A DNA stretch of 64,000 bases from Macrostomum lignano (Eukaryota), in contig NIVC01001037.1 of the NCBI GenBank assembly GCA_002269645.1, forward strand, positions 186,001 through 250,000, given 5' to 3'. Shown here piece after piece: positions 2,521 through 53,248 of the stretch. How positions within the stretch are numbered: the first letter of the stretch is position 1; the number at the start of each line of letters is the position of its first letter. Under the pieces are notes generated by a model. The model made no database searches. It saw only the letters and a list, made by a program, of their open reading frames with translations, and had not been told where the DNA came from. Made by a program: the position numbers and the translations under genes.

Positions 2521-8113
<5,593 letters not shown>

Positions 8114-20958: not shown

Positions 20959-20995
20959 TGTGCACAAGAATTTTAATTGGAGCGGGCGCCAATGC

Positions 20996-30287: not shown

Positions 30288-33200
30288 ATGGCTTCAGGCA
30301 CTCCCATGGAGGTGTCAGTTAGAAATGCCCGCAATGTGCTGATAAAAATTGTCAAAAAAGACCGCCGCCTTCCGCAGCCCGATGAAATGGCTGAACTAAT
30401 CAGCATTGACTGCGACTTAGAAATGAAATACCAGCCAATAAGTGTATCTGTACTGCTGCAAAATGTACGGGGCAAGCTTAGCAATGTACGGTCTGCGTGC
30501 ACCCTGCTGCGCAATAAAATGAAGCAGCTGCTGCTGCCGCGGGAGGACCGCAGCACCGATTGGTCAGTTATGAAAGCCAGCTATCTTCGCTCGTTGCCTA
30601 ACGCCGCCAAACTCCTTGAAACTATTGGCTTTGTTCTTTGCGGCGAAAATTTTATTGCTAATGAGGATCGCATCACATTGCAATCTGTTGTCGACTTTCT
30701 GGTAGATGTGTCCATGGTAACCGAGGAATTGTCCTTGTATCTTAGCGGACAGCATCCGCGAATGGACGTTATTAAATCCTATACATCCGCTGCAGGACAG
30801 CTTGAACAGCGGCAGCAACAGACCCACATAACAACAAACCCGCTGCTGATTGTGCAGGAGAGTGAACTGCCTGCTCAGAAGGAACCCTCAGGTATTCAGC
30901 GCAGAACAGCCACTCTTCCATCATTGCCATCGCCTCCGCTTTCAACTCCCCGTGTCGCTGTATCCTCGGCTGCAACTGAGTCAACAGGACAGAAGCCTCT
31001 GCAATCTGCTCAGCAATTTGAAGATCTGAGCCAGCAGCCAACCCAGAAACCAAGACCTCTTCCGATTCCTTCCTCATCTGCGCCGGCTCAGCTACTCTGC
31101 GACCTATGCGGTGATGAGCCTGTTGCATTGGTCTGCAGCAACGAAGCCTGTCCTAGGCGGCACCTGTGCCTTGGCTGCGACCAGCGCTGGCACGGTCATC
31201 CTAGTCGGCGCGGGCACGAGCGCGAAGGTGCCGATACTGTTGAGCTCAGGCGCAAGATTCCATCGAGTATGACAGCTTCGGCTATAGCCACGCTTCCTAG
31301 GCCCAGAACAGCCTTGGAGCCTGCAGCGTCCGGAATAAAACCGCGCTTGGTAGTGGCGTCTGGCGGCAAAAATTCTGTTAGCTACGTGTCCCAGTTGGGC
31401 TTAGCAGCTTCAAACTTCGACTCAGAGCAACAACAACAGTCAAAAGGGAAAGATCAATCTGAGGTTCAATCTGATGATGTAAAAATACCGAACGAACGTG
31501 AAGAACAACGGACTGATGCACCAGCAATCAAAAAGCAAGAGACTGAAAGTTCAGAAAGTCAAGAAAGAGAGGAGAAGCAAAGAAGACAGGAAGAACAAGA
31601 GAGGCAAGAGCGTATGGAGCAGCAGAGAAAGCAGGAGGATCTAGAGAAAGAGCGTGAACAGCAGAGAAGACAGGAAGAACAAGAAAGGCAAGAGCAAGAA
31701 GAACAGCAAAGAAAGCAGGAGGATCTAGAAAGACAAGAGAAACAGCAAAAGCAGGAGCGAGAGGAGCGAGAAAGAGAAGAACAAGTGAAGCGTATAGCGC
31801 AAGAGTCTGACAGCCCAATGGATCAAGACTTCGAGCCAAGTCAGCCTGATCAGACTAATCAACAGTCCAATGCTCTGCAGCAGATGCTTCAATTCGAGGC
31901 AATGGACATCGCAGACAGCATGTACTCTAGTAGAGGTGGAAGCCTCGGAAAACCTGACTGGGACTCGAACGGTTTTGCTACAATGCCCACACGCAAAGCT
32001 GCACCTAAATTTGTTGATGATAGTAACCAAGATGACTGTTCAAACGAGATCTACCGGCCACCCACACAACAAGCGCACCAGAGCCTTACTCAAACTCTTG
32101 AATCCAATTCTCACGGCCGCAGCCACAACCTGGAGCGCCATCGCGAGGGTCTAAGTCAAATTTCACGAGTTGAAGCTAGCCTGGACTTGCGACAGGAAGA
32201 GCTGCTAACTTACATGCAAATGCTCGAAGTGCGCCCGCATTCAGATCAGGCTCCCGCTGTACCAACGTCAGCCGCTTTTCCGTCTCCGTCTCCGCCACTG
32301 ACTCCACTGCCGCAACACCCTTTGCCCGAAGCGCCAATTCTCGAAGCTGAAACTACAGAAGCTCGAATTGCGAGTGAGGAAGACAGCGACCAGGGCAGGT
32401 GTGATGAATTTCATACACCTAGAGCTTCGCCTCCGCCTCTTCCTTCAGCACAGATCGCGTCTTTAACTGATCCAACCGGTCCAGAACACGAGATGGCTGA
32501 TTCAAGCTGGACCTGTCCTATCTGTACTGTCAACATCCCTCGCAGCGACCTGAAGATTATTGAAAATAGCAATCGTGCTGTTTGCCCCGTGTGCAGCATG
32601 TCTTCCGAGCTTGACACTTACAACCAAGTGGAACGCACTGATGCTGGGACGAGCCAATCGGCTACAGCTTCTTCCTCCAGTTGGGAGTGTCAAGTTTGCA
32701 CTTTTGTCAACAGCGACACTGACTGCTGTCAGATCTGCGAGAACCGTCAATCATCGTCTTCTTCATCTGCCGCCGTACCGTCGGCACCCCTAGAGCAGTC
32801 AGAATCTGAAGCTTCGGCCATCGCTGATAGAAACGCCCGCCTGCTCGATACAATTCGTCGCGCCGACAGCGGCGACGGCGACAATCAAATTGCGGACTCT
32901 CGCGTGATTATCGCCGCCTTGGCCGCGGCTGGCGACCGGGACATTCCGGATGCCCAACTGATCGACTGGGTTCGCCAGGAGTGGCCCCGCCGAGTCGATC
33001 GCGTCCGCTTGGAAGCCACGCGTCGCTACCTCGCCAATCGGCCGGACCTGAAGCCGCATGCTCTGGAAGAGCTGGCTTTCTCGCAACACGAAGTGTCCGA
33101 AGCCATGGCCGACTGTCCGCACCTGTCCGAGGCCGACTGCCTGCCGGTGGTGCTGGACCAATGCTCCAGGCGCCGCGAACGCGCGGTGCAGGAGTTGGCG

Positions 33201-35836
33201 CAGCTCTACCCGAACCTGAGCTGCCGGGATCATCACGCAGCCGTGGCCAGAGCCGATGGCAGTCTTGAAAAGGCACTCGACCAGCTCAACGGATTAGTGC
33301 TGGACAGTTACCTTGGCGACCTGTCACTGGCTGGCGACGGCCCCGATGCGGACGCTGCTGCTTGCGTCTCATTCGACGGCAGCCAGTTCTCGCTGCACAC
33401 CCTCATGGTGGACCACGGACTGCGCAGCGAGTCCATCGCCAGGCGCCTCACTAAGCTGCACAATCACGAGGACTTCGGCCACCATCAGTTGGAGGATCTG
33501 GTGGAAGCTGTTAAGGCCACAGACTGTATGCTGGATGAGGAGAATTGGCTGGAAGAAGTCAGCAGCTACATGAACAAGCAGTGCCCGATCTGCACCGAGA
33601 AGTATCCGCGGCACCAATTCCTGGCCATGGTGAACTGCGGCTGCGAGCTGTGCCAGGAGTGCTTCTATGGCTTCGTCACTACCAATATGAAGGACATGCA
33701 CGTGACTCACCTGAACTGCCCGGTGTGCCGCTATCCCAAGGCTAACGATGTTGAGGCATTGCAGTTGCACTTTCAGCACATGCTGGCTCAGATTGCTCAC
33801 TTCCAGCATCCGGCTTTGCGATTCGAACCGGATGATGTAAACCGTCTGCAGGTGAGTTTGCTAATTAAAGAGTTGCTAGTAAATCAGAAGTAGCTACTAG
33901 TAAATCAGATATAGCTACTAGTAAACCAGAAGTAGCTACTAGTAAATCAGAAGTAGCTACTAGTAAATCATAAGTAGCTACTAGTAAATCAGAAGTAGCT
34001 ACTAGTAAATCAGAAGTAGCTACCAGTAAATCAGATATAGCTACTAGTAAATCAGAATAGCTACTAGTAAATCAAAGTAGCTATAGTAAATCTAGCTACT
34101 AGTAAACCAGAAGTAGCTACTAGTAAATCAGAAGTAGCTACTAGTAAATCAAAAATAGCTACTAGTAAATCAGAAGTAGCTGCTAGTAAATCAGAAGTAG
34201 CCACTAGTAAATCAGAGTAGCTACTAGTAAATCAGAAGTAGCTACTAGTAAATCAGAAGTAGCTACTAGTAAATCAGAAGTAGCTACTAGTAAATCAGAA
34301 GTAGCTACTAGTAAATCAGAAGTAGCTGCTAGTAAATCAGAAGTAGCTACTAGTAAATCAGAAGTAGCTACTAGTAAATCATAAGTAGCTACTAGTAAAT
34401 CAGAAGTAGCTACTAGTAAATCAGAAGTAGCTGCTAGTAAATCAGAAGTAGCTACCAGTAAATCAGATATAGCTACTAGTAAATCAGAAGTAGCTACTAG
34501 TAAATCAAAAATAGCTACTAGTAAATCAGAAGTAGCTGCTAGTAAGTCAGAAGTAGCCACTAGTAAATCAGAAGTAGCTACTAGTAAACCAGAGTAGCAG
34601 AAGATGACAGCTCAAAAGCGAAATAATGTTCAGGAAAAACTAAACGCTACTGCTTATAGTACTACTAAGTAGCGAGTAGTGTGCATTTATTTTCAACATG
34701 AAACCCACAACCCGCACTTGAACAACCCAGGACCGCCTGTTCGACTGGCAGACGATGCGCAACCCCGACTTCGTCTGGTGCAGCCACTGCGGCACCGGCT
34801 TCGAGCTGGATGCCGAGGCCGGCCAGAACCGGTTCACCTGTCCCCGGTGCCGCCGGGACACCTGCAGGGAGTGCCGCAAGCCGTGGGAGAAGCAGCACAA
34901 AGGACTCAGCTGCGAAGACTTCGAACGCTGGAAGCAGGAGAATGATCCGGAGTTCCAGACCAGAGGCGTCGCCTTCTACCTGCAGCAGCACGGCATCGAG
35001 TGCCCGGCCTGCCACTTCAAGTACGCCTTGGCTGGCGGCGGCTGCCTGCACTTTGTGTGCCGAATGTGCCGGGCGAATTTCTGCTCGGGCTGCGGCAATC
35101 TGTTCCAGCATACGGACAGCCAGGGCCTGGCGTGCCGTCATCCGCGTAGCTGCCTCTACCATCTGAGAGATTTCGATATTGACAGGTGAGAAAAATTCCT
35201 ATTGTATCTATTGTATGTTTATATGGCCCCAATTGGGCCAGGTGTGCAACCGACAGCTCAGCCGCAGCTATTGTTGCGCGGCGCATCTGAAGGCTGCGTA
35301 CGGCTGTTCAGTCGCCATACACCCTCAATTACCCCAGCTAATGCTGGCACCCGTTTTACAGCTGGGTGAACTGAAGCAATGCACTGAGTTATATAGCACT
35401 CATGAATCTGGAACTAGACTACTTATATGAGTAGTCAGTACTAGAAATCAGTCTATACGATCCTGTTTACTCGCATCGGCCTCGCAGGCTACAGCAGCTG
35501 CTTCGCATGCACAAAGTCGAATTTCGCTCTTTCGTACCCGACGACGAAGAGTTCGACGAGTGCAAAGTGATGGAGCAGAAGGAGACAGCCGACGGCCTGG
35601 TTGATGAGGCCTGCAGCAGGCGGGTGCACCCCGGCCGGGCCAACCTGTGCGACAAGCACTACTCAGAGTACCTGGTGACGCTTATCAATAGGAACCGGCT
35701 GGATCCGGTTGAGATCATGACGTCTGACGAGCTCGTGGCCGTGTGTAGGCGGCACGGTCTCCAGGTGGCCTTGGGGTCAGAAGAGGTCAACGTGGCGGAA
35801 CTGAAAAAAGCGATCCTGGCTCAGTGCCCGCTCTAA
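30288..35836 (+). CDS. RNF31: HOIP/RNF31-like linear (M1) ubiquitin RBR E3 ligase: PUB - B-box - charged helix - 2 NZF - UBA - RING1 - IBR - RING2 - LDD, about 1455 aa
   Basis: Exons 30288-33851, 34731-35185 and 35488-35836. PUB-like N-terminus (LLLPRE..DWSVMKA..AAKLLETIGF); B-box CDLCGDEP..CLGCDQRWHGHPSRRGHER; NZF WECQVCTFVN; UBA ..RRRERAVQELAQL..DGSLEKALDQL; RING1 QCPIC..CGCELCQECF..NCPVC; IBR RNPDFVWCSHC..KPWEKQHKGLSCEDFERWK; RING2 IECPACHFKYALAGGGCLHFVC (catalytic Cys, TGC 35043-35045); LDD HPRSCLYHLRDF..CKVMEQKE..LCDKHYSEYLVTLIN. Confidence 0.93.
33870..34597. repeat. 21-bp minisatellite (CTACTAGTAAATCAGAAGTAG) in HOIP intron 1
   Basis: Tandem array starting about 20 nt after the donor. 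Confidence 0.96.
35226..35395 (-). mobile_element. Partial copy of the tRNA-derived SINE in HOIP intron 2
   Basis: Reverse complement of the 3' half of 10541-10850. Confidence 0.75.
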
Positions 35837-36011
35837 GTCTGGGTGCGACAGCGTTTTTTATGACAGCAACTTGCTATCAGTTTGTTTAACAACAGTTTTT
35901 CTGTGCACCCCCGTCTTAAAAGTCCTTCGTTTCGTTTCATTATTTCTGATAAAGTTGACGTTTAGCATCCATAAATTTCCACTCGTGACAGCAGCCACTA
36001 TTAAACAAGGA

Positions 36012-39000
36012 TTGCCACTAGTATCCACGACCAGCCACCATTATCCACGAACAGCCACTAGTATCCACGACCAGCCACTAGTATCCACGAATAGCCACTA
36101 GTATCCACGAATAGCCACTAGTATCCACGAATAGCCACTAATATCCACGAATAGCCACTAGTAACCAGAAATAGCCACTAGTATCCACGACCAGCCACTA
36201 GTATCCACGAATAGCCACTAGTATCCACGAATAGCCACTAGTATCCACGAATAGCCACTAGTAACCAGAAATAGCCACTAGTATCCACGACCAGCCACCA
36301 TTATCCACGACCAGCCACTAGTATCCACGAATAGCCACTAGTATCCACGAATAGCCACTAGTAACCAGAAATAGCCACTAGTATCCACGACCAGCCACCA
36401 TTATCCACGACCAGCCACTAGTATCCACGAATAGCCACTAGTATCCACGAATAGCCACTAGTAACCAGAAATAGCCACTAGTATCCACGAACAGCCACCA
36501 TTATCCACGACCAGCCACTAGTATCCACGAATAGCCACTAGTATCCACGAATAGCCACTAGTAACCAGAAATAGCCACTAGTATCCACGACCAGCCACCA
36601 TTATCCACGACCAGCCACTAGTATCCACGAATAGCCACTAGTATCCACGAATAGCCACTAGTAACCAGAAATAGCCACTAGTATCCACGACCAGCCACTA
36701 GTATCCACAAACCAGCCACTAGTATCCACGAACCAGCCACTAGTATCCACGACCAGCCACTAGTATCCACGAATAGCCACTAGTATCCACGAATAGCCAC
36801 TAGTAACCAGAAATAGCCACTAGTATCCACGAACAGCCACCATTATCCACGACCAGCCACTAGTATCCACGAATAGCCACTAGTATCCACGAATAGCCAC
36901 TAGTAACCAGAAATAGCCACTAGTATCCACGACCAGCCACTAGTATCCACAAACCCGCCACTAGTATCCACGAACCAGCCACTAGTATCCACGACCAGCC
37001 ACTAGTATCCACGAATAGCCACTAGTATCCACGAATAGCCACTAGTAACCAGAAATAGCCACTAGTATCCACGAACAGCCACCATTATCCACGACCAGCC
37101 ACTAGTATCCACGAATAGCCACTAGTAACCAGAAATAGCCACTAGTATCCACGACCAGCCACTAGTATCCACAAACCCGCCACTAGTATCCACGAACCAG
37201 CCACTAGTATCCACGAATAGCCACTAGTAACCAGAAATAGCCACTAGTATCCACGACCAGCCACTAGTATCCACAAACCCGCCACTAGTATCCACGAACC
37301 AGCCACTAGTATCCACGAACCAGCCACTAGTATCCACGACCAGCCACTAGTATCCACGAATAGCCACTAGTATCCACGAATAGCCACTAGTAACCAGAAA
37401 TAGCCACTAGTATCCACGAACAGCCACCATTATCCACGACCAGCCACTAGTATCCACGAATAGCCACTAGTATCCACGAATAGCCACTAGTAACCAGAAA
37501 TAGCCACTAGTATCCACGACCAGCCACCATTATCCACGACCAGCCACTAGTATCCACGAATAGCCACTAGTATCCACGACCAGCCACTAGTATCCACGAA
37601 TAGCCACTAGTATCCACGAATAGCCACTAGTAACCAGAAATAGCCACTAGTATCCACGACCAGCCACTAGTATCCACAAACCCGCCACTAGTATCCACGA
37701 ACCAGCCACTAGTATCCACGACCAGCCACTAGTATCCACGAATAGCCACTAGTATCCACGAATAGCCACTAGTAACCAGAAATAGCCACTAGTATCCACG
37801 AACAGCCACCATTATCCACGACCAGCCACTAGTATCCACGAATAGCCACTAGTATCCACGAATAGCCACTAGTAACCAGAAATAGCCACTAGTATCCACG
37901 ACCAGCCACCATTATCCACGACCAGCCACTAGTATCCACGAATAGCCACTAGTATCCACGAATAGCCACTAGTAACCAGAAATAGCCACTAGTATCCACG
38001 ACCAGCCACTAGTATCCACAACCCGCCACTAGTATCCACGAACCAGCCACTAGTATCCACGACCAGCCACTAGTATCCACGAATAGCCACTAGTATCCAC
38101 GAATAGCCACTAGTAACCAGAAATTGCCACTAGTATCCACGACCAGCCACCATTATCCACGACCAGCCACTAGTATCCACGAATAGCCACTAGTATCCAC
38201 GAATAGCCACTAGTAACCAGAAATAGCCACTAGTATCCACGAACAGCCACCATTATCCACGACCAGCCACTAGTATCCACGAATAGCCACTAGTATCCAC
38301 GAATAGCCACTAGTAACCAGAAATAGCCACTAGTATCCACGACCAGCCACCATTATCCACGACCAGCCACTAGTATCCACGAATAGCCACTAGTATCCAC
38401 GACCAGCCACTAGTATCCACGAATAGCCACTAGTATCCACGAATAGCCACTAGTAACCAGAAATAGCCACTAGTATCCACGACCAGCCACTAGTATCCAC
38501 AAACCCGCCACTAGTATCCACGAACCAGCCACTAGTATCCACGACCAGCCACTAGTATCCACGAATAGCCACTAGTATCCACGAATAGCCACTAGTAACC
38601 AGAAATAGCCACTAGTATCCACGAACAGCCACCATTATCCACGACCAGCCACTAGTATCCACGAATAGCCACTAGTATCCACGAATAGCCACTAGTAACC
38701 AGAAATAGCCACTAGTATCCACGACCAGCCACCATTATCCACGACCAGCCACTAGTATCCACGAATAGCCACTAGTATCCACGAATAGCCACTAGTAACC
38801 AGAAATAGCCACTAGTATCCACGACCAGCCACTAGTATCCACAAACCCGCCACTAGTATCCACGAACCAGCCACTAGTATCCACGACCAGCCACTAGTAT
38901 CCACGAATAGCTACTAGTATCCACGAATAGCCACTAGTAACCAGAAATAGCCACTAGTATCCACGAACAGCCACCATTATCCACGACCAGCCACTAGTAT

Positions 39001-39735
39001 CCACGAACAGCCACCATTATCCACGACCAGCCACTAGTATCCACGAATAGCCACTAGTATCCACGAATAGCCACTAGTATCCACGAATAGCCACTAGTAA
39101 CCAGAAATAGCCACTAGTATCCACGACCAGCCACCATTATCCACGACCAGCCACTAGTATCCACGAATAGCCACTAGTATCCACGAATAGCCACTAGTAA
39201 CCAGAAATAGCCACTAGTATCCACGACCAGCCACTAGTATCCACAAACCAGCCACTAGTATCCACGAATAGCCACTAGTAACCAGAAATAGCCACTAGTA
39301 ACCAGAAATAGCCACTAGTATCCACGAAAAGCCACTAGTAACCAGAAATAGCCACTAGTAAACAGAAATAGCCACTAGTAACCAGAAATAGCCACTAGTA
39401 AACAGAAATAGCCACTAGTAACCAGAAATAGCCACTAGTAAACAGAAATAGCCACTAGTAACCAGAAATAGCCACTAGTAAACAGAAATAGCCACTAGTA
39501 ACCAGAAATAGCCACTAGTAAACAGAAATAGCCACTAGTATCCACGAAAAGCCACTAGTAACCAGAAAAAGCCACTAGTAACCAGAAATAGCCACTAGTA
39601 AACAGAAATAGCCACTAGTAACCAGAAATAGCCACTAGTAAACAGAAATAGCCACTAGTATCCACGAAAAGCCACTAGTAACCAGAAAAAGCCACTAGTA
39701 TTCACGAACAGCCACTAATATATACGAACAGCCTC
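36012..39735. repeat. ~3.7-kb 20-bp minisatellite (GCCACTAGTATCCACGAATA and variants) with higher-order structure
   Basis: Variant units TATCCACGAATAGCCACTAG, TAACCAGAAATAGCCACTAG and TATCCACGACCAGCCACCAT recur in ordered blocks. Confidence 0.97.
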
Positions 39736-40429: not shown

Positions 40430-40820
40430 CATTTCACCTGGAGGTTCCTTCAGAAAGAGACATTTCATCTGGTAGATTCCTTTTAACTAAGACATTTCAC
40501 CAGGTAGATTCCTTTTGAATATGACATTTCACCTGGTAGGTTCCTTTCAATGGGACATTTCACCTGGTAGATTCCTTTTAAATGGATATTTCACCTGGTA
40601 GATTCATTTGGAATGGATATTTCACCTGGTAGATTCATTTTAAATGGGATATTTCACCTGGTAGATTCATTTGGAATGGATATTTCACCTGGTAGATTCA
40701 TTTTGAATGGGATATTTCACCTGGTAGATTCCTTTGGAATGGATATTTCACCTGGTAGATTCATTTTGAATGGGATATTTCACCTGGTAGATTCCTTTTG
40801 AATGGGACATTTCACCTGGC
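40430..40820. repeat. ~30-31-bp minisatellite (GATATTTCACCTGGTAGATTCATTT..AATG)
   Basis: Tandem copies ending just upstream of the 40847 ATG. Confidence 0.9.
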
Positions 40821-40846
40821 AGATAATTTTTGTCTCTCATCTGTGC

Positions 40847-44745: not shown

Positions 44746-47226
44746 ATGGCAACAAGCGCAGTTGCTGGTATCGGCGAGGTTGAAATGTGCAAATTCTGCG
44801 GCGACGAGCCTGTCGCTCGCGTCTGCACAGCTCCGGCCTGCGCGCGCAAGCAGCTGTGCGTCAACTGCGACGAGATCTGGCACGGCCACCCGAGCAGACG
44901 CGAACATCAGCGGCAGGAGGTTGATGTTTTATTGCGAGAAAACGGCCGCAGTGACCAGCCGTTGACGCAACCGCAGCAGCAAGGTTATCCTTGGTCGTGT
45001 CCGCACTGCACATTTCAAAATGTCAGCGCAGTTCAATGGAAGCCAGAAGATCGGCTGATGTGCGAAGTGTGCAGCAAGACCAGCGTTGGCAGGGAATTGG
45101 TAGAAGCTGGACCAGCTCAGACAAGCAACAGCAATACAACCAAGACTAAGAAGTCGAGTAAAAAGTCTTCATCACCAAGCACGGAGATTGCTTGTCCTAC
45201 TTGCACCTTTGTCAATACTGCGAAGGGAGCAAAAAGATGCGAAATTTGCAACTCTCAGCTGCCATCGCCTTCGAAAAAGCGTGAAAATCCAGCAGCTGCT
45301 TCACCTAATGCGGAGAATAGTATTGGATTAAATGACTTGAGTCCTCAAGAAAGACAGAGGCAGTTTCAAGCTCAAGCTGCAATTGGCAGACAGAATGCTG
45401 GGCGTTCGAATCAGGGAGATCAGCAGCCGCCCAGCCAATCAGACAGCGAATCTCATAGAAAGCAGGCGCATGCTTCAGCGGTGGAAGACCGCGTAGAACA
45501 AAAGCGCCAGCGAACTCAGCCGCCGTCTGAAAATCGTGCTGCAGCTGTGGAAACCTCGGCGAATTCTCTAAGAAAAGAGACGCGGGCGTTTTCCAGGTCC
45601 GACGTGGTACCGGCCGGCATCGCTACAGAGTCCAAACAGCTTGAAGATGCTGAGTATCCACTCTATCAGCAGCAGTTGGAGGAAAAGGAATTGCAGGTAC
45701 AACTGGCTGAACTGCTGGCAGTCCAGGAGGCAGAAAAAAGGCAGTTTACTCAGGCTCAGCTGCAGGAAAGAGAGCAGCTAATACAGGAACTGCAGACGCG
45801 GCTAAAAGAAGAGCAGGAGCAGAGACTTCGTACAGAGAGGCGTTTTAAGAAAGAGGCCACGGAAAGACAGCGGCTGGAGTTGGCAATGCTGGAGCAGCAG
45901 CGGCTGGAGAGAGAAAAAAGAGAAGAACTCGAAAGGCAAGCGAGAATCAAAGATGAGAACAGGAGGCAGAGAGAAGGTGAAGAAATGCGACAACGGAAGA
46001 GAAGAGAAGAGGCGGAACGAAAGAAAAAAGAGAAGGAAGAGGCTGAGCGGTTTAGAAAGGAGAGAGAAGAGGCTGAGCGGTTGAGACAGCAGAGAGAAGA
46101 GGCTGAGCGGTTGAGAAAGGAGAGAGAAGAGGCTGACCGGTTGAGACAGCAGAGAGAAGAGGCTGACCGGTTGAGACAGCAGAGAGAAGAGGCTGAGTGG
46201 TTGAAACAGCAGAGAGAAGAGGCTGACCGGTTGAGACAGCAGAGAGAAGAGGCCGACCGGTTGAGAAAGGAGAGAGAAGAGGCTGAGCGGTGGAGAAAGG
46301 AGAGAGAAGAGGCTGAGCGGTTGAGAAAGGAGACAGAAGAGGCGCAGCGACTGTGGAAGAGAGAAGAGGCTGAGCGACAACGAAGAAACCAATCTCTGCG
46401 GAACGCGTCGGCAGCCGTAGGGCGATGGGAAAGGGCAGAGGAAGAGCGGCTGCGCCAAGACCAAGAGGCTGAAGCCATGCAGAATGACCTTCAGCTGATC
46501 AGAAAGACGAGGCTGCAAAGAGGTAAACAGGTGCCGCTGGATGAAAATCCCAGAAAATATCAAGGTGACGAAGCGAGGCAGAGAAGGGCAGATGATACGA
46601 CTTGGCAGATGGAAGCGGTTACTCATGCCAGCGGTCTGCAGTTTGGGGCCGATGCGATCTCATTTCCATCCCGTGCTAGATCATCGGCAACAGTTTCATC
46701 GAGGCGAGTTGAGGATTCTGAGTCTGTTGATGCTGCTGAAAAGTTGCTTAATGGGATATATGGTCCTGAAACATCAGTAAATGACCTTCACAAAGTAAAT
46801 ACGTCTGATGAATCTGATGAGTTTGATGAGCCAAAAAAATCGTCTACTCGAGTTACTGGCAGAATGAAAGCTCAAAAGGCTGAGACGAAACTGCAATGCG
46901 CTCACTGCGGCAAGTACAGAGCCATTACGGGCCCTATTAAACCTGTTGGTTTTCAGTGCTTTAATTGCTACAAGCACACTTGCAAGATGTGCGGCCGGCC
47001 TTGGGAAGATGTGCATACAGGCAGAAAGTGCAAAGAACTTGACAGTCTTCCAGGAGTAGCCCCTTCTCCAAAGCGTGGCTCTGTGAGCCGACCTGGGAGT
47101 GCACAGATTCAGGTCATGCGGTGCACGAGATGTCGTGTCCATGTGGATACAAATTTGAAAAGAGACTCATCGAATGTTATGTGTCGCAATTGTGGAAATA
47201 TTTTGCATCTTCCGAGACCCTACTGA
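44746..47226 (+). CDS. HOIP-derived paralog 3: B-box - 2 NZF - E/R/K-rich helix - IBR - truncated RING2-like zinc ribbon, 826 aa, single exon
   Basis: B-box CKFCGDEP..LCVNCDEIWHGHPSRREHQR; NZFs WSCPHCTFQN..CEVC and CPTCTFVN..CEIC; EEAERLRQQR repeats; IBR-like LQCAHC..FQCFNCYKHTCKMCGRPWEDVHTGRKCKEL; final CTRC-x16-CRNC without the GCxH catalytic motif. Confidence 0.85.
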   Translation: MATSAVAGIGEVEMCKFCGDEPVARVCTAPACARKQLCVNCDEIWHGHPSRREHQRQEVDVLLRENGRSDQPLTQPQQQGYPWSCPHCTFQNVSAVQWKPEDRLMCEVCSKTSVGRELVEAGPAQTSNSNTTKTKKSSKKSSSPSTEIACPTCTFVNTAKGAKRCEICNSQLPSPSKKRENPAAASPNAENSIGLNDLSPQERQRQFQAQAAIGRQNAGRSNQGDQQPPSQSDSESHRKQAHASAVEDRVEQKRQRTQPPSENRAAAVETSANSLRKETRAFSRSDVVPAGIATESKQLEDAEYPLYQQQLEEKELQVQLAELLAVQEAEKRQFTQAQLQEREQLIQELQTRLKEEQEQRLRTERRFKKEATERQRLELAMLEQQRLEREKREELERQARIKDENRRQREGEEMRQRKRREEAERKKKEKEEAERFRKEREEAERLRQQREEAERLRKEREEADRLRQQREEADRLRQQREEAEWLKQQREEADRLRQQREEADRLRKEREEAERWRKEREEAERLRKETEEAQRLWKREEAERQRRNQSLRNASAAVGRWERAEEERLRQDQEAEAMQNDLQLIRKTRLQRGKQVPLDENPRKYQGDEARQRRADDTTWQMEAVTHASGLQFGADAISFPSRARSSATVSSRRVEDSESVDAAEKLLNGIYGPETSVNDLHKVNTSDESDEFDEPKKSSTRVTGRMKAQKAETKLQCAHCGKYRAITGPIKPVGFQCFNCYKHTCKMCGRPWEDVHTGRKCKELDSLPGVAPSPKRGSVSRPGSAQIQVMRCTRCRVHVDTNLKRDSSNVMCRNCGNILHLPRPY

Positions 47227-48440: not shown

Positions 48441-49232
48441 ATGTCGCTGTTTGACGTTCGCTCGATTGCGTGGACCTGCGCCGGCTGTAGTCTTAGAAAC
48501 GAGCTTCGATTTCATTGGTTCTCCACAGCTGCACCAAAAGATGGTGAAGCTGACTGTGCTAAGCTTGAGAAGCTCCATCAGGCCAGCTCTGAGTTTCCTT
48601 CCTGCCTGACCTCGCTCGAGTGCGGCCAGTGCGGCTGCCTCGCTGCCAGCTGCGTTTCGCCGCGAGGAGTTTTCGGCGCCTCATCATCGTCTAACAAAGG
48701 AGAGCTCCGTCTTGAGCCGCGGCATAGGTTGGCCTGCCTACAGAGGCGGGCTCGAGTTCAGCTTGAGCAGCTGCGGAAACTGACTGACCAGCTGAGCTCT
48801 GTTGAAGCTGCGGTAGCCGCAACCGAACTGGCTGATCAAGCTGCAGGTAGAGAGGCTGAAAAATTGGCTGAAACTGCCTCATCTTCCAGAGCTGCCAGCA
48901 GCCGCCGCGGTTCCAGCTGGTCCGAGCGGCTGTTCGGCTCCCTGGCCGGTCTGGCCCGGCACAACAGACGGCAGTCGTCACTGTCTGCAGCAACTACTGA
49001 CAGTAGCAAAGACGTTGACGCTTTCGAGCGTTGGAGGTCTGGAGTTCGAGCCCAGCTGGCCGCCGAAGCCGAAGCCGCCAGGCAGCGTCGAGCAGCCGAG
49101 ACGCCGGAGCAGCGGCGCAAACGAGCCCAGCGTCGGCGAGATCGACGTCTCCGACGCCGGCTGAAGGAGGCCGAAGCCGAAGTCGAAGAGCGTCGGCGTC
49201 GGGAGGCCGAGACAGCGTTTTCATCTGGTTAA
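48441..49232 (+). CDS. HOIP-family-derived NZF plus coiled-coil protein (paralog 4a), 263 aa
   Basis: ATG directly after TTCCAG. WTCAGCSLRN...LECGQC (split NZF) is followed by SPRGV and a helix (LEQLRKLTDQL) homologous to the 49361 and 50498 exons. The exon structure is uncertain. Confidence 0.55.
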   Translation: MSLFDVRSIAWTCAGCSLRNELRFHWFSTAAPKDGEADCAKLEKLHQASSEFPSCLTSLECGQCGCLAASCVSPRGVFGASSSSNKGELRLEPRHRLACLQRRARVQLEQLRKLTDQLSSVEAAVAATELADQAAGREAEKLAETASSSRAASSRRGSSWSERLFGSLAGLARHNRRQSSLSAATTDSSKDVDAFERWRSGVRAQLAAEAEAARQRRAAETPEQRRKRAQRRRDRRLRRRLKEAEAEVEERRRREAETAFSSG

Positions 49233-49360
49233 CTGGCCACAAAGGCAATTAAAAGATTGTTAAGCTTTGGCATCAAAACCCCCTTGAGTTTTCGTACCGA
49301 ACAAATACTCATGTAACTTGGTCAAGATACTCTTTGTAATTTCAAATTGTTTAACTCCAG

Positions 49361-49885
49361 GTGCACCTTCCGGACCGCAACCAGCTGCTGTGGAACTGTC
49401 CGCACTGCACCTTCACCAACGATGAGGTGCTCAGCGACAGCTCCAAGCAGCAGCAGCTGCGCTGCGCTGTCTGCCAGGCCGACTGCGCCGCCGACGTCAG
49501 CATCCGCGGCGTCTGGCTGACCTCTCAGCGAGCCACCGAAGCTCTGATTGGCGAGGCGAAACTCGCCGACGAGCTGCAGTCGATCGTCCGCGATCATGAG
49601 GTGCGCATCGCCGAGCTGACGCAACGGCTGGAGGCCGCACAGCGTCGACTGTCGTCAGCTGCTCCGGCGCGGCCCAACCTGCTGCTGCACCGAAGCCAGT
49701 CTGAAACGGCCGCCGCCGCTGCCCAGCCTCCGTTGCTAAGCAACCGTGGCGGACTGCGTCGCTCCAGCGCACCAACCGGAGCCTCGCAGCGTCGCTGCAG
49801 TGGCAGCGCAGCAAACGGCAAAGCTGACCGGTCGGCTCTGGTCTACGAGCAGCTGGTTGATAGTGATGAAGAAGATTCAAATTAA
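49361..49885 (+). CDS. NZF plus coiled-coil exon/ORF (paralog 4b); start or upstream exon unresolved
   Basis: After the acceptor CTCCAG it reads VHLPDRNQLLWNCPHCTFTNDEV..LRCAVC..SIRGVWLTSQR..VRIAELTQRL. This is homologous to exon 2 of paralog 5. No in-frame ATG was found. Confidence 0.55.
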   Translation: MHLPDRNQLLWNCPHCTFTNDEVLSDSSKQQQLRCAVCQADCAADVSIRGVWLTSQRATEALIGEAKLADELQSIVRDHEVRIAELTQRLEAAQRRLSSAAPARPNLLLHRSQSETAAAAAQPPLLSNRGGLRRSSAPTGASQRRCSGSAANGKADRSALVYEQLVDSDEEDSN

Positions 49886-50263
49886 TTTTGCTGCATAACA
49901 TGTGCTAGCAATACCAATGTCCGCTAATTCCATGAGGAACTGGCTATTGCGATATTCTCGCTTTTTACCCACAGTTTTTTAAATTGTGTTCAAAAGCCAA
50001 TAGGCGGCTGTCTGTTTTACATTTTTAATTATGCGATTAACCAGTTCAGTATTTAATTATTTTTTCTGACAGTATTTGATACAGACTGCTACAGTTTACA
50101 ATAAATATTGATTGCCAATTATAATTTATCAAAAAGTTGCGTTAAGACTTTATTCTTCATTCATAATCAATTTCGGTTCTCGGCCTGCTAGGCTATCATT
50201 TTTGTGCTCAAGGCAAGATTGGCAGCATTTTTCTCAATCAAATATTTCACCCGTTCCAGCGGC

Positions 50264-52543
50264 ATGTCAGCGGACAGCCCGCCCCAGCTGTGCAGCCGTT
50301 GCAACAGCCGGCCCGCAGTGCTCGCCTGCGCTGAGTGCCCCGGTCAGCTGCTGTGCGACACCTGCGACACCGACTGGCACCAGCAGACTGAGGAGCGGCG
50401 GCTGCATCGCAGATCGGTGAGCAGCTCGTGCTGGGCTGAGTGAATATTGTCACTGATCTGAGTTTATATTTAATGAGTAGCATCGCACAATTTTCAGATT
50501 CACCTGGCTGGCGCTGCTATCGTGTCCTGGACGTGCAGGCACTGCCTATTTTCGGAAAACCAGCATGTTTTGACCAACTCGGATTCGCAGTACTTGGTGT
50601 GCTTAGTGTGCGAGACCGAGAGCGCAGAGTTTTTCCGCGTTGACGGCATCGTGTGCTCTGACAGAGTAGCGGATCAGATCAGACAGGACTCAGGGAGAAT
50701 TGCTGAGCTGACTGATCAGCTTGGCCAGTTAAAGCTGCAGCTCGAGGCTCAGGAGGCTGAGTTACAAACATCTGCGGTTCAAAGCAGAGAACTGCACGTT
50801 CAGCTGCAGGAAAGAGAGCAGCAAATACAGGAGCTGCAGAGGCGGCTAAGAGAAGAGCAGGAGCAGAGACTTCGTACAGAGAGGCGTTTCGAGAAAGAGG
50901 CCACGGAAAGGCAGCGGCTGGAAAGAGAAAAAAGAGAAGAACTCGAAAGACAAGCGAGAATCAAGGATGAGAACAGGAGGCAGAGGGAAGCTGAAGAAAT
51001 GCGACAGCGGAAGAGAACAGAAGAGGCAGAACGAAATAAAATAGAGACAAAAGCGGCTGAGCGATTGGAAAATCGTGTCGCAGCAGCGGAAGCCTCGGCA
51101 AATTCTCCAAGTAGAGAGACGCGAGCGTCTTCGAGGTCCGACATGGTACCGGCCGGCACCGCTACAGAGTCCAAACAGCTTGAAGATGCTGAGTATCCAC
51201 TCTATCAGCAGCAGCTGGAGGAAAAGGAGTTGCAGGTACAACTGGCTGAATTGCTGGCAGTCCAGGAGGCAGAAAAAAGACAGTTAACTCAGGCTCAGCT
51301 GCAGGAAAGAGAGCAGCTAATACAGGAGCTGCAGACGCGGCTAAAAGAAGAGCAGGAGCAGAGACTTCGTACAGAGAGGCGTTTCGAGAAAGAGGCCACG
51401 GAAAGGCAGCGGCTGGAAAGAGAAAAAAGAGAAGAACTCGAAAGACAAGCGAGAATTAAGGATGAGAACAGGAGGCAGAGAGAAGGTGAAGAAATGCGAC
51501 AGCGGAAGAGAACAGAAGAGGCAGAACGAAAGAAAATAGAGACAAACGCGGCTGAGCGATTGGAAAATCGTGTCGCAGCAGCGGAAGCCTCGGCAAATTC
51601 TCCAAGAAGAGAGACGCCAGCGTCTTCGAGGTCCGATATGGTATCGGCCGACATCGCTACAGCGTCCAAGCAGCTTGAAGATGCTGAGTATCCACTCTAT
51701 CAGCAGCAGATTGAGGAAAAGGAGTTGCAAGTACAACTGGCTGAACTGCTGGCAGTCCAGGAGGCAGAAAAAAGGCAGTTTACTCAGGCTCAGCTGCAGG
51801 AAAGAGAGCAGCTAATACAGGAACTGCAGACGCGGCTAAAAGAAGAGCAGGAGCAGAGACTTCGTACAGAGAGGCGTTTCAAGAAAGAGGCCATGGAAAG
51901 GCAGCGGCTTGAGTTGGCAATGCTGGAGCAGCAGCGGCTGGAGAGAGAAAAAAGAGAAGAACTCGAAAAGCAAGCGAGAATCGAGGATGATAAGAGGAGG
52001 CAGAGAGAAGGTGAAGAAATGCGACAACGGAAGAGAAGAGAAGAGGCGGAACGAAAGAAAAAAGAGAAGGAAGAGGCTGAGCGGTTGAGACAGCAGAGAG
52101 AAGAGGCTGAGCGGTTGAGACAGCAGAGAGAAGAGGCTGAGCGGTTGAGACAGCAGAGAGAAGAGACTGAGCGGTTGAGACAGCAGAGAGAAGAGGCTGA
52201 TCGGTGGAGAAAGGAGAGAGAAGAGGCTGACCGGTTGAGACAGCAGAGAGAAGAGACTGAGCGGTTGAGACAGCAGAGAGAAGAGGCTGATCGGTGGAGA
52301 AAGGAGAGAGAAGAGCCAAAAAAATCGTCTACTCGAGTTACTGGCAGAATGAAAGCTCAAAAGGCTGGGACGAAACCGCAATGCGCTCACTGCGGCAAGT
52401 ACAGAGCCATTACGGGCCCTATTGAACCTGTTGGTTTTCAGTGCTTTAACTGCTACAAGCACACTTGCAAGATGTGCGGCCGGCCTTGGGAAGATGTGCA
52501 TGATGGAAGAAAGTGCAAAGAACTTGACAGTCTTCCGAAGTAG
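50264..52543 (+). CDS. HOIP-derived paralog 5: B-box - NZF - triplicated E/R/K-rich module - IBR
   Basis: Exon 1 50264-50416 (LCSRCNSRPAVLACAECPGQLLCDTCDTDWH, donor GTGAGC) and exon 2 50498-52543 (WTCRHCLFSEN..CLVC; QCAHC..RPWEDVHDGRKC). The C-terminal DNA is nearly identical to paralog 3. Confidence 0.8.
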
Positions 52544-53248
52544 CCCCTTCTCCAAAGCGTGGCTCTGTGAGCCGACCTGGGAGTGCACAGATTCAGCTCG
52601 TTTACTGCCCGGGATGTCGTTGCAATGTGGATACAAATCTGCAAAGAGACTCATCGAATGTTATTTGTCGCAATTGTGGAACTGTTTTGCATCGTCCGAG
52701 ACCCTACTGAGATTTTGTTCTTTTGCAAGTTTGGTGCAAAGATTGGGCGACGGCCACAAACAATAATAGTTTTTTGCCTGAGACGTAAGCGGCGCGTCAA
52801 AAAATTGAATCAATTGAAGAAATTTTTTCATTGGATATGTACATTGTACGTGCTTTTTAAACAGATTTATCTTTTTCAGATTGAATTTTTTGCTGTCAGA
52901 TCCAAATATACTTCTATTATGTCTTCTATTTTTTAACAGTATATAATTCCCTTTTTGAATTTTATTTTTGATTTTTTAAACTTTTTCATTAACCTCATGA
53001 AACGGTTTCTTACGCTTGTTTAACATCGCAAAGCCGCTGTTATTCCAGTTTTTTGCAGAAAAGATATAAATACCATTTTTTGTTTGGTTTATTCATTTTA
53101 TAGTATTTGTCTTGCTCACAAGTAGTTCAAACGCAGACCAAGGCCAAAAGAATAGAACAGAGCTCAGCCAGAAGGATCAAATAGAGCCCCACCTTCCAGT
53201 GAATAATCTGGTATCTTATCTCTGGTATAATTCCCACTTTCAGCCGCA

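What the first reader, a model, noticed from the sequence alone, without database searches (positions are those of the whole stretch)
30288..52710. Tandem array of HOIP-derived, catalytically dead paralogs beside the active ligase: a candidate decoy/regulator system for linear ubiquitin signalling
Seen: directly downstream of intact HOIP, on the same strand, lie 4-5 genes sharing HOIP's unusual B-box (C..CGD.P...C..C...WHGHP.R..H.R in paralogs 2 and 3) and NZF fingers, each keeping a different piece of the RBR. Paralog 2 has RING1+RING2*+LDD without IBR, paralogs 3 and 5 have IBR plus a RING2 stub without RING1, and 4a/4b have NZF+coiled coil only. None has PUB, UBA or the catalytic Cys. Most ORFs are long and open with Zn ligands conserved, arguing for selection. 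Inference: a lineage-specific family of pseudo-E3s or ubiquitin-binding adaptors that tune, scaffold or act as decoys for LUBAC, analogous to cFLIP or CARD-only proteins. I know of no described HOIP expansion of this form.
Basis: partly seen in the sequence, partly recalled or inferred. Interest (0 to 1): 0.85.

Follow-up and report, generated by a model that had tools for sequence, protein, structure and literature searches.

The report
Tandem HOIP-derived pseudo-ligase genes, flatworm
In the flatworm Macrostomum lignano, the gene for the linear-ubiquitin ligase HOIP is followed by a row of truncated copies of itself that have lost the catalytic cysteine; at least two of them are transcribed and kept intact by selection, and they belong to a larger, apparently undescribed expansion of what I understand to be a usually single-copy gene.

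Summary
The window is Macrostomum lignano contig NIVC01001037.1. An intact three-exon HOIP (30288-35836, 1455 aa, catalytic Cys codon 35043-45) is followed on the + strand by four kinds of paralog:
- P2: B-box, NZF, RING1, no IBR, RING2 with Cys->Ala, LDD.
- P3: B-box, two NZFs, an E/R-rich helix, IBR and a C4 remnant.
- 4a and 4b: small ORFs.
- P5: like P3.

- P5 has its own B-box exon and an intron.
- P5's C-terminal remnant is out of frame in this copy (1-bp deletion).
- 4a's "NZF" is only a motif match.

The B-box and IBR are HOIP-type. P2 and P3 have RNA-derived GenBank models; in a sister contig HOIP, P2 and P3 share one transcription-unit name. Both stay open in three diverged genomic copies, with dN/dS 0.3-0.5 (HOIP 0.16) and every Cys conserved. 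Selection on 4a, 4b and P5 is not demonstrable.

A second cluster on another contig holds at least nine more HOIP-like ORFs. Four keep the catalytic Cys, and one is a dead P2-type gene that groups with P2 (100% bootstrap).

The best reading is a lineage-specific HOIP family containing old, maintained pseudo-E3s. The proposed decoy or regulator role is untested.

The parts
30288..33851 (+). HOIP exon 1: PUB-like N-terminus, HOIP-type B-box (aa 271-313), E/Q-rich stretch, NZF1 (aa 741-769), NZF2 (aa 799-817), UBA region, RING1 (aa 1099-1147)
   Evidence: ORF. Donor CAG|GTGAGT at 33851/2. RING1 matches RNF31 structures at 5.6e-9. The model equals GenBank P0072.
34731..35185 (+). HOIP exon 2: IBR and RING2, with the catalytic Cys codon at 35043-35045
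   Evidence: Pfam IBR and IBR_1. Splice sites read directly. Translation AGGGCLHFVC.
35488..35836 (+). HOIP exon 3: linear-chain determining domain (LDD) and stop codon
   Evidence: Pfam PF18091 at 4e-26 and 2.4e-28.
36014..39733 (.). 20-bp satellite, about 185 copies, filling the HOIP-P2 spacer; also present in the sister contigs
   Evidence: GC skew of -0.4.
40802..42946 (+). P2, a single-exon pseudo-HOIP: B-box 40934-41062, NZF 41297-41380, RING1 42023-42175, no IBR, RING2-like 42410-42502 with Ala at the catalytic position (42452-42454), LDD about 42533-42832. The true start is uncertain (Met1 or Met16; the GenBank model is 5'-partial from 40850).
   Evidence: dN/dS 0.31-0.51, with all 42 Cys conserved.
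44746..47226 (+). P3: B-box 44788-44907, long-loop NZF 44992-45072, canonical NZF 45193-45249, E/R-rich helix 45661-46395 (10-aa repeats 46036-46377), IBR 46897-47031, C4 remnant 47122-47193
   Evidence: dN/dS 0.44, with all 25 Cys conserved.
48441..49232 (+). 4a: 263-aa ORF with a WxCxxC...CxxC motif (48471-48632) and a helical R/A/E-rich tail. The ATG directly follows TTCCAG. Its relation to HOIP is not established.
   Evidence: dN/dS 0.44-0.70, mostly not significant. No gene model.
49361..49885 (+). 4b: 174-codon ORF that starts at the acceptor CTCCAG|GTG, 128 bp after the 4a stop, and contains no Met. It has a HOIP-family long-loop NZF (49391-49474) and a short helix.
   Evidence: The acceptor motif and the SL ending in ATG are from PMC8629364.
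50264..50416 (+). P5 exon 1: ATG and a divergent B-box (MSADSPPQLCSRC...WHQQTEERRLHRRS), with donor GTGAGC at 50417
   Evidence: Conserved in both sister copies. Pfam ANCHR-like B-box 4.8e-6.
50498..52543 (+). P5 exon 2: NZF 50528-50611, a 495-bp unit repeated 2.2 times plus 10-aa repeats (E/R-rich helix), IBR 52382-52516, and a premature stop caused by a 1-bp deletion at about 52537
52540..52710 (+). Out-of-frame continuation of P5 that still encodes the C4 remnant (…YCPGCRCNVDTNLQRDSSNVICRNCGTVLHRPRPY*) and ends at the same stop position as P3
   Evidence: This remnant is in frame in both P5 copies of the sister contig.

Best explanation
The locus is one of two clusters of a lineage-specific, tandemly duplicated HOIP (RNF31/LUBEL) gene family in Macrostomum lignano.

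Shown:
- A complete, catalytically competent HOIP is followed by genes built from pieces of HOIP that all lack the RING2 catalytic cysteine.
- P2 is a near full-length 'dead' HOIP: B-box, NZF, RING1, RING2 with Cys->Ala, and LDD, without the IBR.
- P3 and P5 are proteins with B-box, NZF, an E/R-rich helix, IBR and a C4 remnant.
- P2 and P3 are old duplicates. They are transcribed, and in the sister contig they carry the same transcription-unit name as HOIP. They are maintained by purifying selection.
- The distal 4a-4b-P5 module varies in copy number, exchanges sequence with P3 by gene conversion, and is partly decaying.

Inferred:
- The proteins cannot make ubiquitin thioesters and so act non-catalytically.
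- P2 has a strongly constrained RING1 and retains RING2-LDD. It most likely still engages an E2~Ub and/or acceptor ubiquitin, and so competes with or scaffolds HOIP-type ligases.
- P3, P5 and 4b keep the NZF Thr-Phe ubiquitin-contact motif (Leu-Phe in P5). They most likely act as ubiquitin-chain-binding adaptors, with the long charged helix as a spacer.
- 4a, 4b and P5 look like SL trans-spliced cistrons.
For: HOIP origin:
- Pairwise B-box, RING1, LDD and IBR similarities.
- Solved-structure matches to RNF31 only.
- Pfam LDD in P2 above the curated cut-off.
- An exhaustive phmmer search of 1.84 billion proteins with P3 aa 1-186. Every long hit outside M. lignano that carries the B-box is a HOIP/RNF31 with RBR-LDD, or a crinoid multi-B-box protein.
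- A shared CxxxxC insertion in the M. lignano B-boxes.

Loss of catalysis:
- Alignment to human HOIP RING2.

Real genomic feature:
- The same gene order in contigs NIVC01001037 (the window), NIVC01001484 and NIVC01001573, at 90-96% DNA identity.

Transcription:
- The GenBank annotation of this assembly is built only from RNA-seq and transcriptome data (PMC5730564).
- It contains models for HOIP, P2 and a P3/P5 gene in the window.
- In the sister contig the three are named Mlig012393 g1, g2 and g3.

Selection:
- P2 dN/dS 0.31-0.51, p 0.0004-0.009. Its RING1 is at 0.08-0.14, and all 42 of its Cys are conserved.
- P3 dN/dS 0.44, p<1e-4, with all 25 Cys conserved.
- HOIP 0.16.

Age:
- P2 groups with a second dead P2-type gene in the other cluster at 100% bootstrap. 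Both share the 'SKS' motif in place of 'GGC'.

Trans-splicing signals:
- TTCCAG|ATG (4a), CTCCAG|GTG (4b) and TTCCAG (P5), against the published motif [T/C]TNCAG.
- The SL ends in ATG, and typical operon spacing is about 100 bp.
- Neither 4a nor 4b contains a GT[AG]AG donor.
Against: - No experiment or read-level data was available here. Expression rests on the existence of RNA-derived models, not on measured levels.
- The third model (44746-52543, 760 aa) fuses the P3 start with the P5 end. It may be a mapping artefact, so separate P3 and P5 transcripts are not proven.
- dN/dS of 0.3-0.5 is relaxed compared with HOIP.
- For 4a, 4b and the P5 N-terminus it is not significantly below 1.
- P5 is frameshifted in this window, and P3 is frameshifted in an A7 run in the third contig.
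- Gene conversion between P3 and P5 (dS = 0 for the C-terminus) complicates the rate estimates.
- Ubiquitin binding, E2 binding and any contact with HOIP are inferred from motifs only. The Drosophila LUBEL NZF binds ubiquitin chains poorly (PMC5090701).
- Both structure predictions were too poor to use.
Confidence: 0.6

Rival explanations
1. The paralogs are functionless by-products of rampant tandem duplication in a recently polyploid, repeat-rich genome. They are transcribed only by read-through from HOIP and are on their way to becoming pseudogenes.
For: - P5 is frameshifted in the window, and P3 is frameshifted in contig NIVC01001573.
- The copy number of the 4a-4b-P5 module differs between contigs, and one copy has a mariner insertion.
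- dN/dS for 4a, 4b and the P5 N-terminus is not significantly below 1. The IBR-remnant of one P5 copy gives 1.7.
- 4a and 4b have no gene model.
- The assembly is highly redundant (PMC5730564).
Against: - P2 and P3 share only 23-57% amino-acid identity with HOIP in the shared domains, yet keep ORFs of 714 and 826 codons in three copies (two for P3).
- Every Cys is conserved, and dN/dS is significantly below 1.
- The P2 type exists in both clusters, so it predates their split.
- Indels between copies are in frame, apart from the isolated 1-bp events. Those could be long-read assembly errors (my inference).
Confidence: 0.15
2. The paralogs are functional but independent of HOIP and M1-ubiquitin. 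They would be neofunctionalised zinc-finger and ubiquitin-binding proteins used in other pathways. P2 might even work as an E3 through RING1 alone, or through a non-Cys mechanism.
For: - RING1 is the most constrained part of P2 (dN/dS 0.08-0.14).
- P3 and P5 have Ser residues where the catalytic Cys would lie.
- Truncated HOIP-like proteins without an RBR occur independently in crinoids, spiders and an eel.
- The LUBEL authors suggest that short LUBEL isoforms lacking the RBR act as ubiquitin-independent adaptors (PMC5090701).
Against: - P2 keeps the HOIP-specific LDD and lies next to HOIP. HOIP, P2 and P3 share a transcription-unit name in the sister contig, which suggests co-regulation.
- From my own knowledge, RBR RING1 domains do not activate E2~Ub for direct transfer.
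- Nothing here tests either view.
Confidence: 0.2
3. The ORFs are not separate genes. They would be alternative 3' exons or isoforms of one long HOIP transcription unit, comparable to the RBR-less isoforms of Drosophila LUBEL.
For: - All lie on the same strand.
- The transcription-unit prefix is shared (Mlig012393 g1-g3).
- One annotated model spans P3 to P5.
- Three of seven LUBEL polypeptides lack the RBR (PMC5090701).
Against: - HOIP ends with its own stop codon after a complete LDD.
- P2, P3, 4a and P5 begin with their own ATG, and P2, P3 and P5 with their own B-box. The published pipeline cut the unit into separate genes on trans-splice and poly(A) evidence.
- 4a and 4b contain no consensus donor sites that could join them to downstream exons.
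- The P3-P5 fusion joins 87-93% identical repeats, so it may be a mapping artefact.
Confidence: 0.05

Closest known systems
HOIP / RNF31 (mammals) and LUBEL (Drosophila), the M1-linked ubiquitin chain ligase
   Same: The upstream gene is an orthologue-grade HOIP: PUB-like N-terminus, B-box, NZFs, UBA region, RING1-IBR-RING2 with the catalytic Cys, and LDD. The paralogs reuse its B-box, NZF, RING1, IBR, RING2 and LDD modules. B-box and NZF are described as HOIP/LUBEL domains in PMC5090701.
   Different: From my own knowledge HOIP is single-copy in most animals. Here there are at least five ORFs with an intact catalytic motif and several without one, in two clusters. The paralogs lack PUB, UBA and the catalytic Cys, and each lacks either the IBR or RING1.
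RBR-less short isoforms of Drosophila LUBEL
   Same: These are non-catalytic products carrying the N-terminal B-box/NZF part of the linear-ubiquitin ligase. Their authors proposed them to be adaptors (PMC5090701).
   Different: In the fly they are splice or termination isoforms of one gene. Here they are separate duplicated genes with their own start and stop codons and added modules (E/R-rich helix, IBR, dead RING2-LDD).
Pseudo-E3s such as BARD1 and TRAF2
   Same: These proteins keep an E3 fold but lack activity, and act structurally or as regulators in active complexes (PMC13061254). P2 fits the sequence definition.
   Different: Those are RING-type proteins with demonstrated partners. I found no description of a natural RBR/HOIP pseudo-ligase, and no partner is known here.
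cFLIP beside caspase-8/-10 (a tandem catalytically dead decoy paralog)
   Same: From my own knowledge, this is a tandem duplicate of a signalling enzyme that lost its catalytic Cys and regulates the parent enzyme.
   Different: The resemblance is in genomic logic only. The fold and chemistry are unrelated, and heteromerisation with the parent enzyme is not shown here.
Lineage-specific expansion of the ARI1 RBR family in Caenorhabditis
   Same: An RBR ligase subfamily that has expanded strongly and recently in one invertebrate lineage (PMC6288150, abstract).
   Different: It is a different RBR subfamily. Nothing I saw (abstract only) describes a tandem series of domain-deleted, Cys-less members.
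Uncharacterised truncated HOIP-like proteins in other animals (crinoid multi-B-box proteins XP_071957743 and XP_033122818; spider 'lubel-like' 502 aa; eel 'RNF31-like' 321 aa)
   Same: They carry HOIP-type B-boxes, with or without NZF and a UBA-like region, but no RBR-LDD. Shedding the catalytic half of HOIP therefore seems to recur.
   Different: They have different architectures and arose independently. All are predictions without any study, and some may be partial models.

Membership tests
RBR E3 ubiquitin ligases | RING1 domain with its eight zinc ligands | tested here: met
   Met for HOIP and P2: RNF31 RING1 matches at 5.6e-9 and 2e-4 to 4e-3, with the ligands aligned. P3, 4a, 4b and P5 have no RING1.
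RBR E3 ubiquitin ligases | IBR domain between RING1 and RING2 | tested here: not met
   P2 has about 78 residues without zinc ligands between RING1 and RING2. HOIP, P3 and P5 do have an IBR (Pfam; RNF31 IBR 2CT7 at 0.0036), but P3 and P5 lack RING1. No paralog therefore has the full triad.
RBR E3 ubiquitin ligases | RING2 with the catalytic cysteine (human HOIP Cys885) | tested here: not met
   HOIP has GGGCLHF. P2 has STANHIA, with Ala at the position. P3 and P5 have no Cys between or before their CxxC pairs in either possible alignment. The paralogs are therefore not filed as active RBR ligases.
HOIP / RNF31 / LUBEL family | Linear-chain determining domain (Pfam PF18091) | tested here: met
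   HOIP 98.5 bits; P2 26.9 bits against a cut-off of 23. P2 also aligns to the RNF31 RING2-LDD structures over about 150 residues. P3, 4a, 4b and P5 have no LDD.
HOIP / RNF31 / LUBEL family | HOIP-type B-box (CxxCG...CxxC...CxxCDxxWHxHPxRxxHxR) | tested here: met
   Present in HOIP, P2, P3 and, in divergent form, P5. The exhaustive search retrieves HOIP/RNF31/LUBEL-like proteins for every named or long B-box hit. Absent from 4a and 4b.
HOIP / RNF31 / LUBEL family | Npl4-type zinc finger(s) | tested here: met
   P2, P3 (two), 4b and P5 have mutually similar long-loop NZFs like HOIP NZF1. The Thr-Phe motif is kept in P2, P3 and 4b. 4a is inconclusive: motif only, no significant similarity.
HOIP / RNF31 / LUBEL family | PUB domain and HOIP UBA pair | tested here: not met
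   No paralog matches the PUB-like or UBA region of the M. lignano HOIP. In HOIP itself the PUB is supported only by similarity to mollusc HOIP N-termini and to HOIP-B, not by Pfam.
HOIP / RNF31 / LUBEL family | Synthesis of Met1-linked ubiquitin chains | not testable with these tools
   A biochemical assay is needed. For the paralogs it is predicted to be absent.
Pseudoenzyme / decoy paralog of a signalling enzyme | Catalytic residue lost while the fold-defining residues are kept under purifying selection | tested here: met
   P2 dN/dS 0.31-0.51 and P3 0.44, with all Cys conserved in three copies (two for P3's C-terminus). The P2 type is shared by both clusters. Inconclusive for 4a, 4b and P5.
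Pseudoenzyme / decoy paralog of a signalling enzyme | Binds the parent enzyme, its substrate or its cofactors and changes its output | not testable with these tools
   No interaction or activity data. Both structure predictions failed (pLDDT 39 and 49).
SL trans-spliced operon (M. lignano) | [T/C]TNCAG acceptor at the 5' end of the downstream cistron, and a short same-strand intergenic distance | tested here: met
   4a has TTCCAG|ATG. 4b has CTCCAG|GTG, 128 bp after the 4a stop, in frame with the SL-terminal ATG. P5 has TTCCAG 4 nt before its ATG. The criteria are from PMC8629364. The HOIP-P2 and P2-P3 spacers are long and repeat-filled.
SL trans-spliced operon (M. lignano) | RNA-seq reads carrying the spliced leader at that site | not testable with these tools
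   No read data was available. The only indirect evidence is the shared transcription-unit name of HOIP, P2 and P3 in the sister contig.

The most novel reading that the evidence does not exclude
P2-type 'dead HOIP' is an ancient, selected pseudo-RBR. It would be co-transcribed with its parent ligase, would still dock E2~Ub on RING1 and acceptor ubiquitin on RING2-LDD, and would thereby throttle or template Met1-chain synthesis. The B-box/NZF/helix/IBR proteins would read the chains. Together they would form a self-contained writer, pseudo-writer and reader module for linear ubiquitin that has diversified in Macrostomum, possibly under immune or stress selection. This would be the first natural RBR pseudoenzyme regulator.
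Probability: 0.2. Interest if true: 0.7.

Novelty: new variant of a known kind. Interest (0 to 1): 0.45.

Why it matters
Linear (Met1) ubiquitination is made by one dedicated ligase, HOIP. It is studied almost entirely in mammals and flies, where, to my knowledge, the gene is single-copy.

This flatworm has two clusters holding at least five apparently active HOIP-like genes. It also has old, conserved, catalytically dead derivatives, transcribed next to the parent gene. That gives a natural series of domain-deletion 'mutants' that evolution has kept.

If P2 or P3 modulate HOIP, they would be the first pseudo-RBR regulators, and would show which HOIP surfaces can work without catalysis. M. lignano has transgenesis (PMC5730564) and, to my knowledge, RNAi, so this can be tested directly.

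If they do nothing, the locus is still a clear example of birth-and-death evolution and gene conversion in a hidden polyploid. The proteins are already in GenBank as 'hypothetical proteins', and no paper found here discusses them.

Tried and rejected
- **Word-index homologue searches.** Searches with P2, with the non-repetitive parts of P3, and with HOIP returned only M. lignano proteins. They gave no cross-species orthologues. Only the exhaustive search reached other phyla.
- **Structure prediction.** AlphaFold2 was run on P2 aa 366-714 and on the P3 C-terminus, each with a 5-sequence alignment. Mean pLDDT was 38.9 and 49.0. The models were unusable, so no fold search was run.
- **Literature.** There were no hits for RNF31 + Macrostomum, for any of the Mlig gene identifiers, or in the supplements of two M. 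lignano papers. HOIP + flatworm gave two irrelevant papers.
- **Assembly or haplotype artefact.** Rejected. The paralogs differ deeply from each other and from HOIP, and the same gene order recurs in three contigs.
- **4a, 4b and P5 as cis-spliced exons of one gene.** 4a and 4b contain no GT[AG]AG donor, and both end in stop codons. P5 has its own ATG/B-box exon.
- **P2 as a retrocopy.** Considered because P2 has no introns where HOIP has two. This is not decisive: P2 lies in tandem with HOIP, and HOIP-B in the other cluster is also intronless.
- **Homology of the P3/P5 'RING2 stub'.** Two alignments to HOIP RING2 are possible, with CTRC matching either Cys871/874 or Cys890/893. I therefore call it a C4 remnant at the RING2 position.
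- **The extreme dN/dS of the last 22 codons of P2.** This comes from an indel-shifted tail, not from selection.

Full report
**Origin of the window**

The P2 ORF is 96% identical to a Macrostomum lignano protein. Locus L005 of GenBank assembly GCA_002269645.1 (Mlig_3_7), contig NIVC01001037.1, is base-for-base identical to window 30850-52946. The window is therefore a free-living flatworm sequence. It is rich in satellites and microsatellites.

**The parent gene**

- A 1222-codon ORF (30225-33893) and two shorter ORFs encode the whole HOIP architecture.
- Reading the junctions gives three exons: 30288-33851 (donor CAG|GTGAGT), 34731-35185 and 35488-35836.
- The 1455-aa product is identical to the RNA-derived GenBank protein BOX15_Mlig022946g1.
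- Pfam finds LDD (2.4e-28), RING2/IBR_1 and IBR.
- RING1 matches RNF31 structures.
- The catalytic motif GGGCLHF is intact.

**The paralogs**

P2 (40802-42946):
- It matches human RNF31 RING1 and RING2-LDD structures, and passes the Pfam LDD cut-off.
- It has a HOIP-type B-box and a long-loop NZF.
- It has no IBR ligands between RING1 and RING2.
- It has Ala where human Cys885 lies.

P3 (44746-47226):
- It has a B-box 57% identical to HOIP's (3.6e-17) and two NZFs.
- It has about 11 copies of a 10-residue E/R-rich repeat.
- Its IBR has a single significant solved-structure hit, the RNF31 IBR.
- It ends in a CxxC-x16-CxxC remnant without a catalytic Cys.

P5:
- It is 87-93% identical to P3 in the repeat and IBR DNA.
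- It starts with its own exon, ATG plus a divergent B-box (50264-50416). An 81-nt intron follows. This structure is conserved in both sister copies and recognised by Pfam.
- A 1-bp deletion at about 52537 truncates P5 in this window. The downstream frame still reads the remnant to the ancestral stop at 52710.

4a and 4b:
- 4b has a family-type NZF.
- The 4a motif has no significant relative.

**Gene structure of the distal part**

- 4b has no Met and begins exactly at CTCCAG|GTG, 128 bp after the 4a stop.
- The 4a ATG follows TTCCAG. The P5 ATG lies 4 nt after TTCCAG.
- The published M. lignano trans-splice acceptor motif is [T/C]TNCAG. The spliced leader ends in ATG, and operon spacing peaks near 100 bp (PMC8629364).
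- Joining the leader to 4b gives an in-frame ATG-GTG-CAC.
- Neither 4a nor 4b contains a consensus donor.
- I infer that they are trans-spliced cistrons, if they are genes at all. This is not shown.

**Is the array real?**

- Two further contigs of the same assembly carry the same order at 90-96% identity: NIVC01001484.1 (L001/L002) and NIVC01001573.1 (L006).
- This fits the known redundancy and hidden polyploidy of the sequenced line (PMC5730564; PMC10468722, abstract).
- In NIVC01001484 the 4a-4b-P5 module is present twice, one copy with a mariner insertion. Both P5 copies there (986 and 694 aa before adding exon 1) are intact to the final HLPRPY*.
- The array therefore varies in copy number. 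It is not a collapsed-haplotype artefact.

**Expression**

- The GenBank annotation of Mlig_3_7 was built only from RNA-seq and a de novo transcriptome. Transcription units were cut into genes at trans-splice and poly(A) sites (PMC5730564).
- It contains HOIP, P2 (5'-partial) and a 760-aa model running from the P3 ATG to the P5 stop in the window.
- In the sister contig HOIP, P2 and P3 are named Mlig012393 g1, g2 and g3, which is one transcription-unit name.
- The P3-P5 fusion, and its counterpart P0002, join near-identical repeats. They may be mapping artefacts.
- 4a and 4b have no model.
- No expression levels or read data were available, and the gene identifiers appear in no searchable paper or supplement.

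**Selection**

Nei-Gojobori comparisons between the copies gave the following:

| Gene or region | dN/dS | Notes |
|---|---|---|
| HOIP | 0.16 | dS 0.015 |
| P2 | 0.31-0.51 | p 0.0004-0.009; all 42 Cys unchanged |
| P2 RING1 | 0.08-0.14 | |
| P2 RING2-LDD | 0.5 | |
| P3 | 0.44 | p<1e-4; all 25 Cys unchanged |
| P3 IBR-remnant | 0.33 | dS 0.32 |
| 4a, 4b, P5 N-terminus | 0.2-1.7 | mostly not significant |

- The window P3 C-terminus is nearly identical to a P5 copy of the sister contig (dS 0), but diverged from its positional counterpart. This indicates gene conversion.
- Random assembly errors would push these ratios towards 1. The constraint on P2 and P3 is therefore, if anything, underestimated (inference).

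**Where the modules come from**

- An exhaustive phmmer search of 1.84 billion representative proteins with P3 aa 1-186 gave 46 hits.
- Every long B-box hit outside M. lignano is either a HOIP/RNF31 with RBR-LDD or a crinoid protein. The HOIPs come from starfish, hemichordate, abalone, scallop and clam. The crinoid proteins have 7-9 tandem HOIP-type B-boxes and no RBR.
- The shorter named B-box hits are RNF31-like or lubel-like; two weak NZF-only hits are fungal proteins.
- The B-box is a recognised HOIP/LUBEL domain (PMC5090701).
- M. lignano members share a two-residue insertion (CxxxxC) in the B-box. P5 lacks it.

**A second cluster**

The same search revealed more M. lignano relatives on contig NIVC01000762.1. 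Within the roughly 50 kb that I examined (L004 and L003), at least nine same-strand HOIP-like ORFs occur:
- An intronless full-length HOIP-B (P0070).
- Three shorter RBR-LDD genes. With HOIP-B, that makes four ORFs that keep GGC[LM]H.
- A 1011-aa P2-like gene with 'SKSGVPVF' at the catalytic site.
- A P3-like gene with B-box and NZFs (P0007).
- B-box-only and RING1-only ORFs.

A neighbour-joining tree of the RING1-to-LDD region puts HOIP-A, HOIP-B, the 533-aa RBR-LDD gene and the two dead genes in one clade (100% bootstrap). HOIP-A, HOIP-B and the 533-aa gene group together at 93%. The two dead genes group together at 100%. Long-branch attraction cannot be excluded. Even so, the shared 'SKS' motif and shared architecture suggest that the Cys was lost once, before the clusters separated.

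**How it most likely works**

Shown:
- The genes derive from HOIP.
- The catalytic Cys is lost.
- P2 and P3 have RNA-based models.
- P2 and P3 are under purifying selection, and the P2 type is old.

Inferred:
- P2 can still dock an E2~Ub (constrained RING1) and perhaps acceptor ubiquitin (LDD). It would so compete with, or scaffold, the active HOIP-like ligases.
- P3, P5 and 4b bind ubiquitin chains through NZF and IBR, with a long charged helix as a spacer.
- Co-transcription with HOIP would couple their dosage.

The pseudo-E3 concept is established for RING proteins (PMC13061254). I found no report of an RBR or HOIP pseudo-ligase, or of a HOIP expansion.

**Verdict**

It is open for 4a, 4b and P5.
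- The decoy or regulator mechanism is untested.
It is a comparative-genomics lead in a tractable model rather than a demonstrated new system.

Noticed in passing
L004 9989-23565 and L003 158-17174 (contig NIVC01000762.1): A second cluster of at least nine HOIP-like ORFs on one strand. It includes an intronless full-length HOIP-B, three shorter RBR-LDD genes that keep the catalytic Cys, a dead P2-like gene and a P3-like gene. About 22 kb between the two loci was not seen.
   Followed up: partly
window 61238-61780 (+), perhaps with 56365-56811 (+): Another RBR-type gene fragment (Pfam IBR 6.8e-8, with a RING-like N-terminal part) lies a few kb downstream of RagA. It is preceded by an ORF with a long acidic stretch. 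It may be an Ariadne-like ligase.
   Followed up: no
window 53249-54178 (+): An intronless RagA/Gtr1 GTPase (309 aa, Pfam 2.5e-98). It marks the distal end of the array in both contigs where that end was seen (window and NIVC01001484).
   Followed up: partly
window 36014-39733; 33876-34598; 40410-40824: Three tandem repeats. A 20-bp satellite (about 185 copies, strong GC skew) fills the HOIP-P2 spacer. A 21-bp repeat (about 35 copies) sits in HOIP intron 1. A 32-bp repeat (about 13 copies) runs into the first codons of the P2 ORF, so the P2 start codon is uncertain.
   Followed up: partly
window 46897-47226 versus L002 19600-19939: The IBR-remnant of the window's P3 is almost identical to that of a P5 copy in the sister contig (dS = 0), but is diverged from its positional counterpart P3 (dS about 0.3). 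This indicates gene conversion or unequal crossing-over within the array.
   Followed up: partly
L002 3314-4504: Mariner/Tc1-like transposase ORFs are inserted between 4a and 4b of the sister locus.
   Followed up: no
proteins P0006, P0008, P0049 and P0011 (not in the window): Crinoid proteins with 7-9 tandem HOIP-type B-boxes and a UBA-like C-terminus but no RBR. Also spider 'lubel-like' (502 aa) and eel 'RNF31-like' (321 aa) truncated HOIP-like predictions. Non-catalytic HOIP derivatives may have arisen repeatedly.
   Followed up: partly
window 600-5200, 20530-21818, 54323-55060, 58284-60494; 24000-30000: Long microsatellite and minisatellite arrays that produce spurious repetitive ORFs on both strands, and an AT-rich block (GC 0.24-0.36) just upstream of HOIP.
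   Followed up: no
window 10867-11361 (-) and 16044-16844 (-): An EF-hand-containing ORF, and an ORF without a Pfam hit that I read by eye as resembling a retroelement RNase H/RT fragment, both upstream of the array.
   Followed up: no
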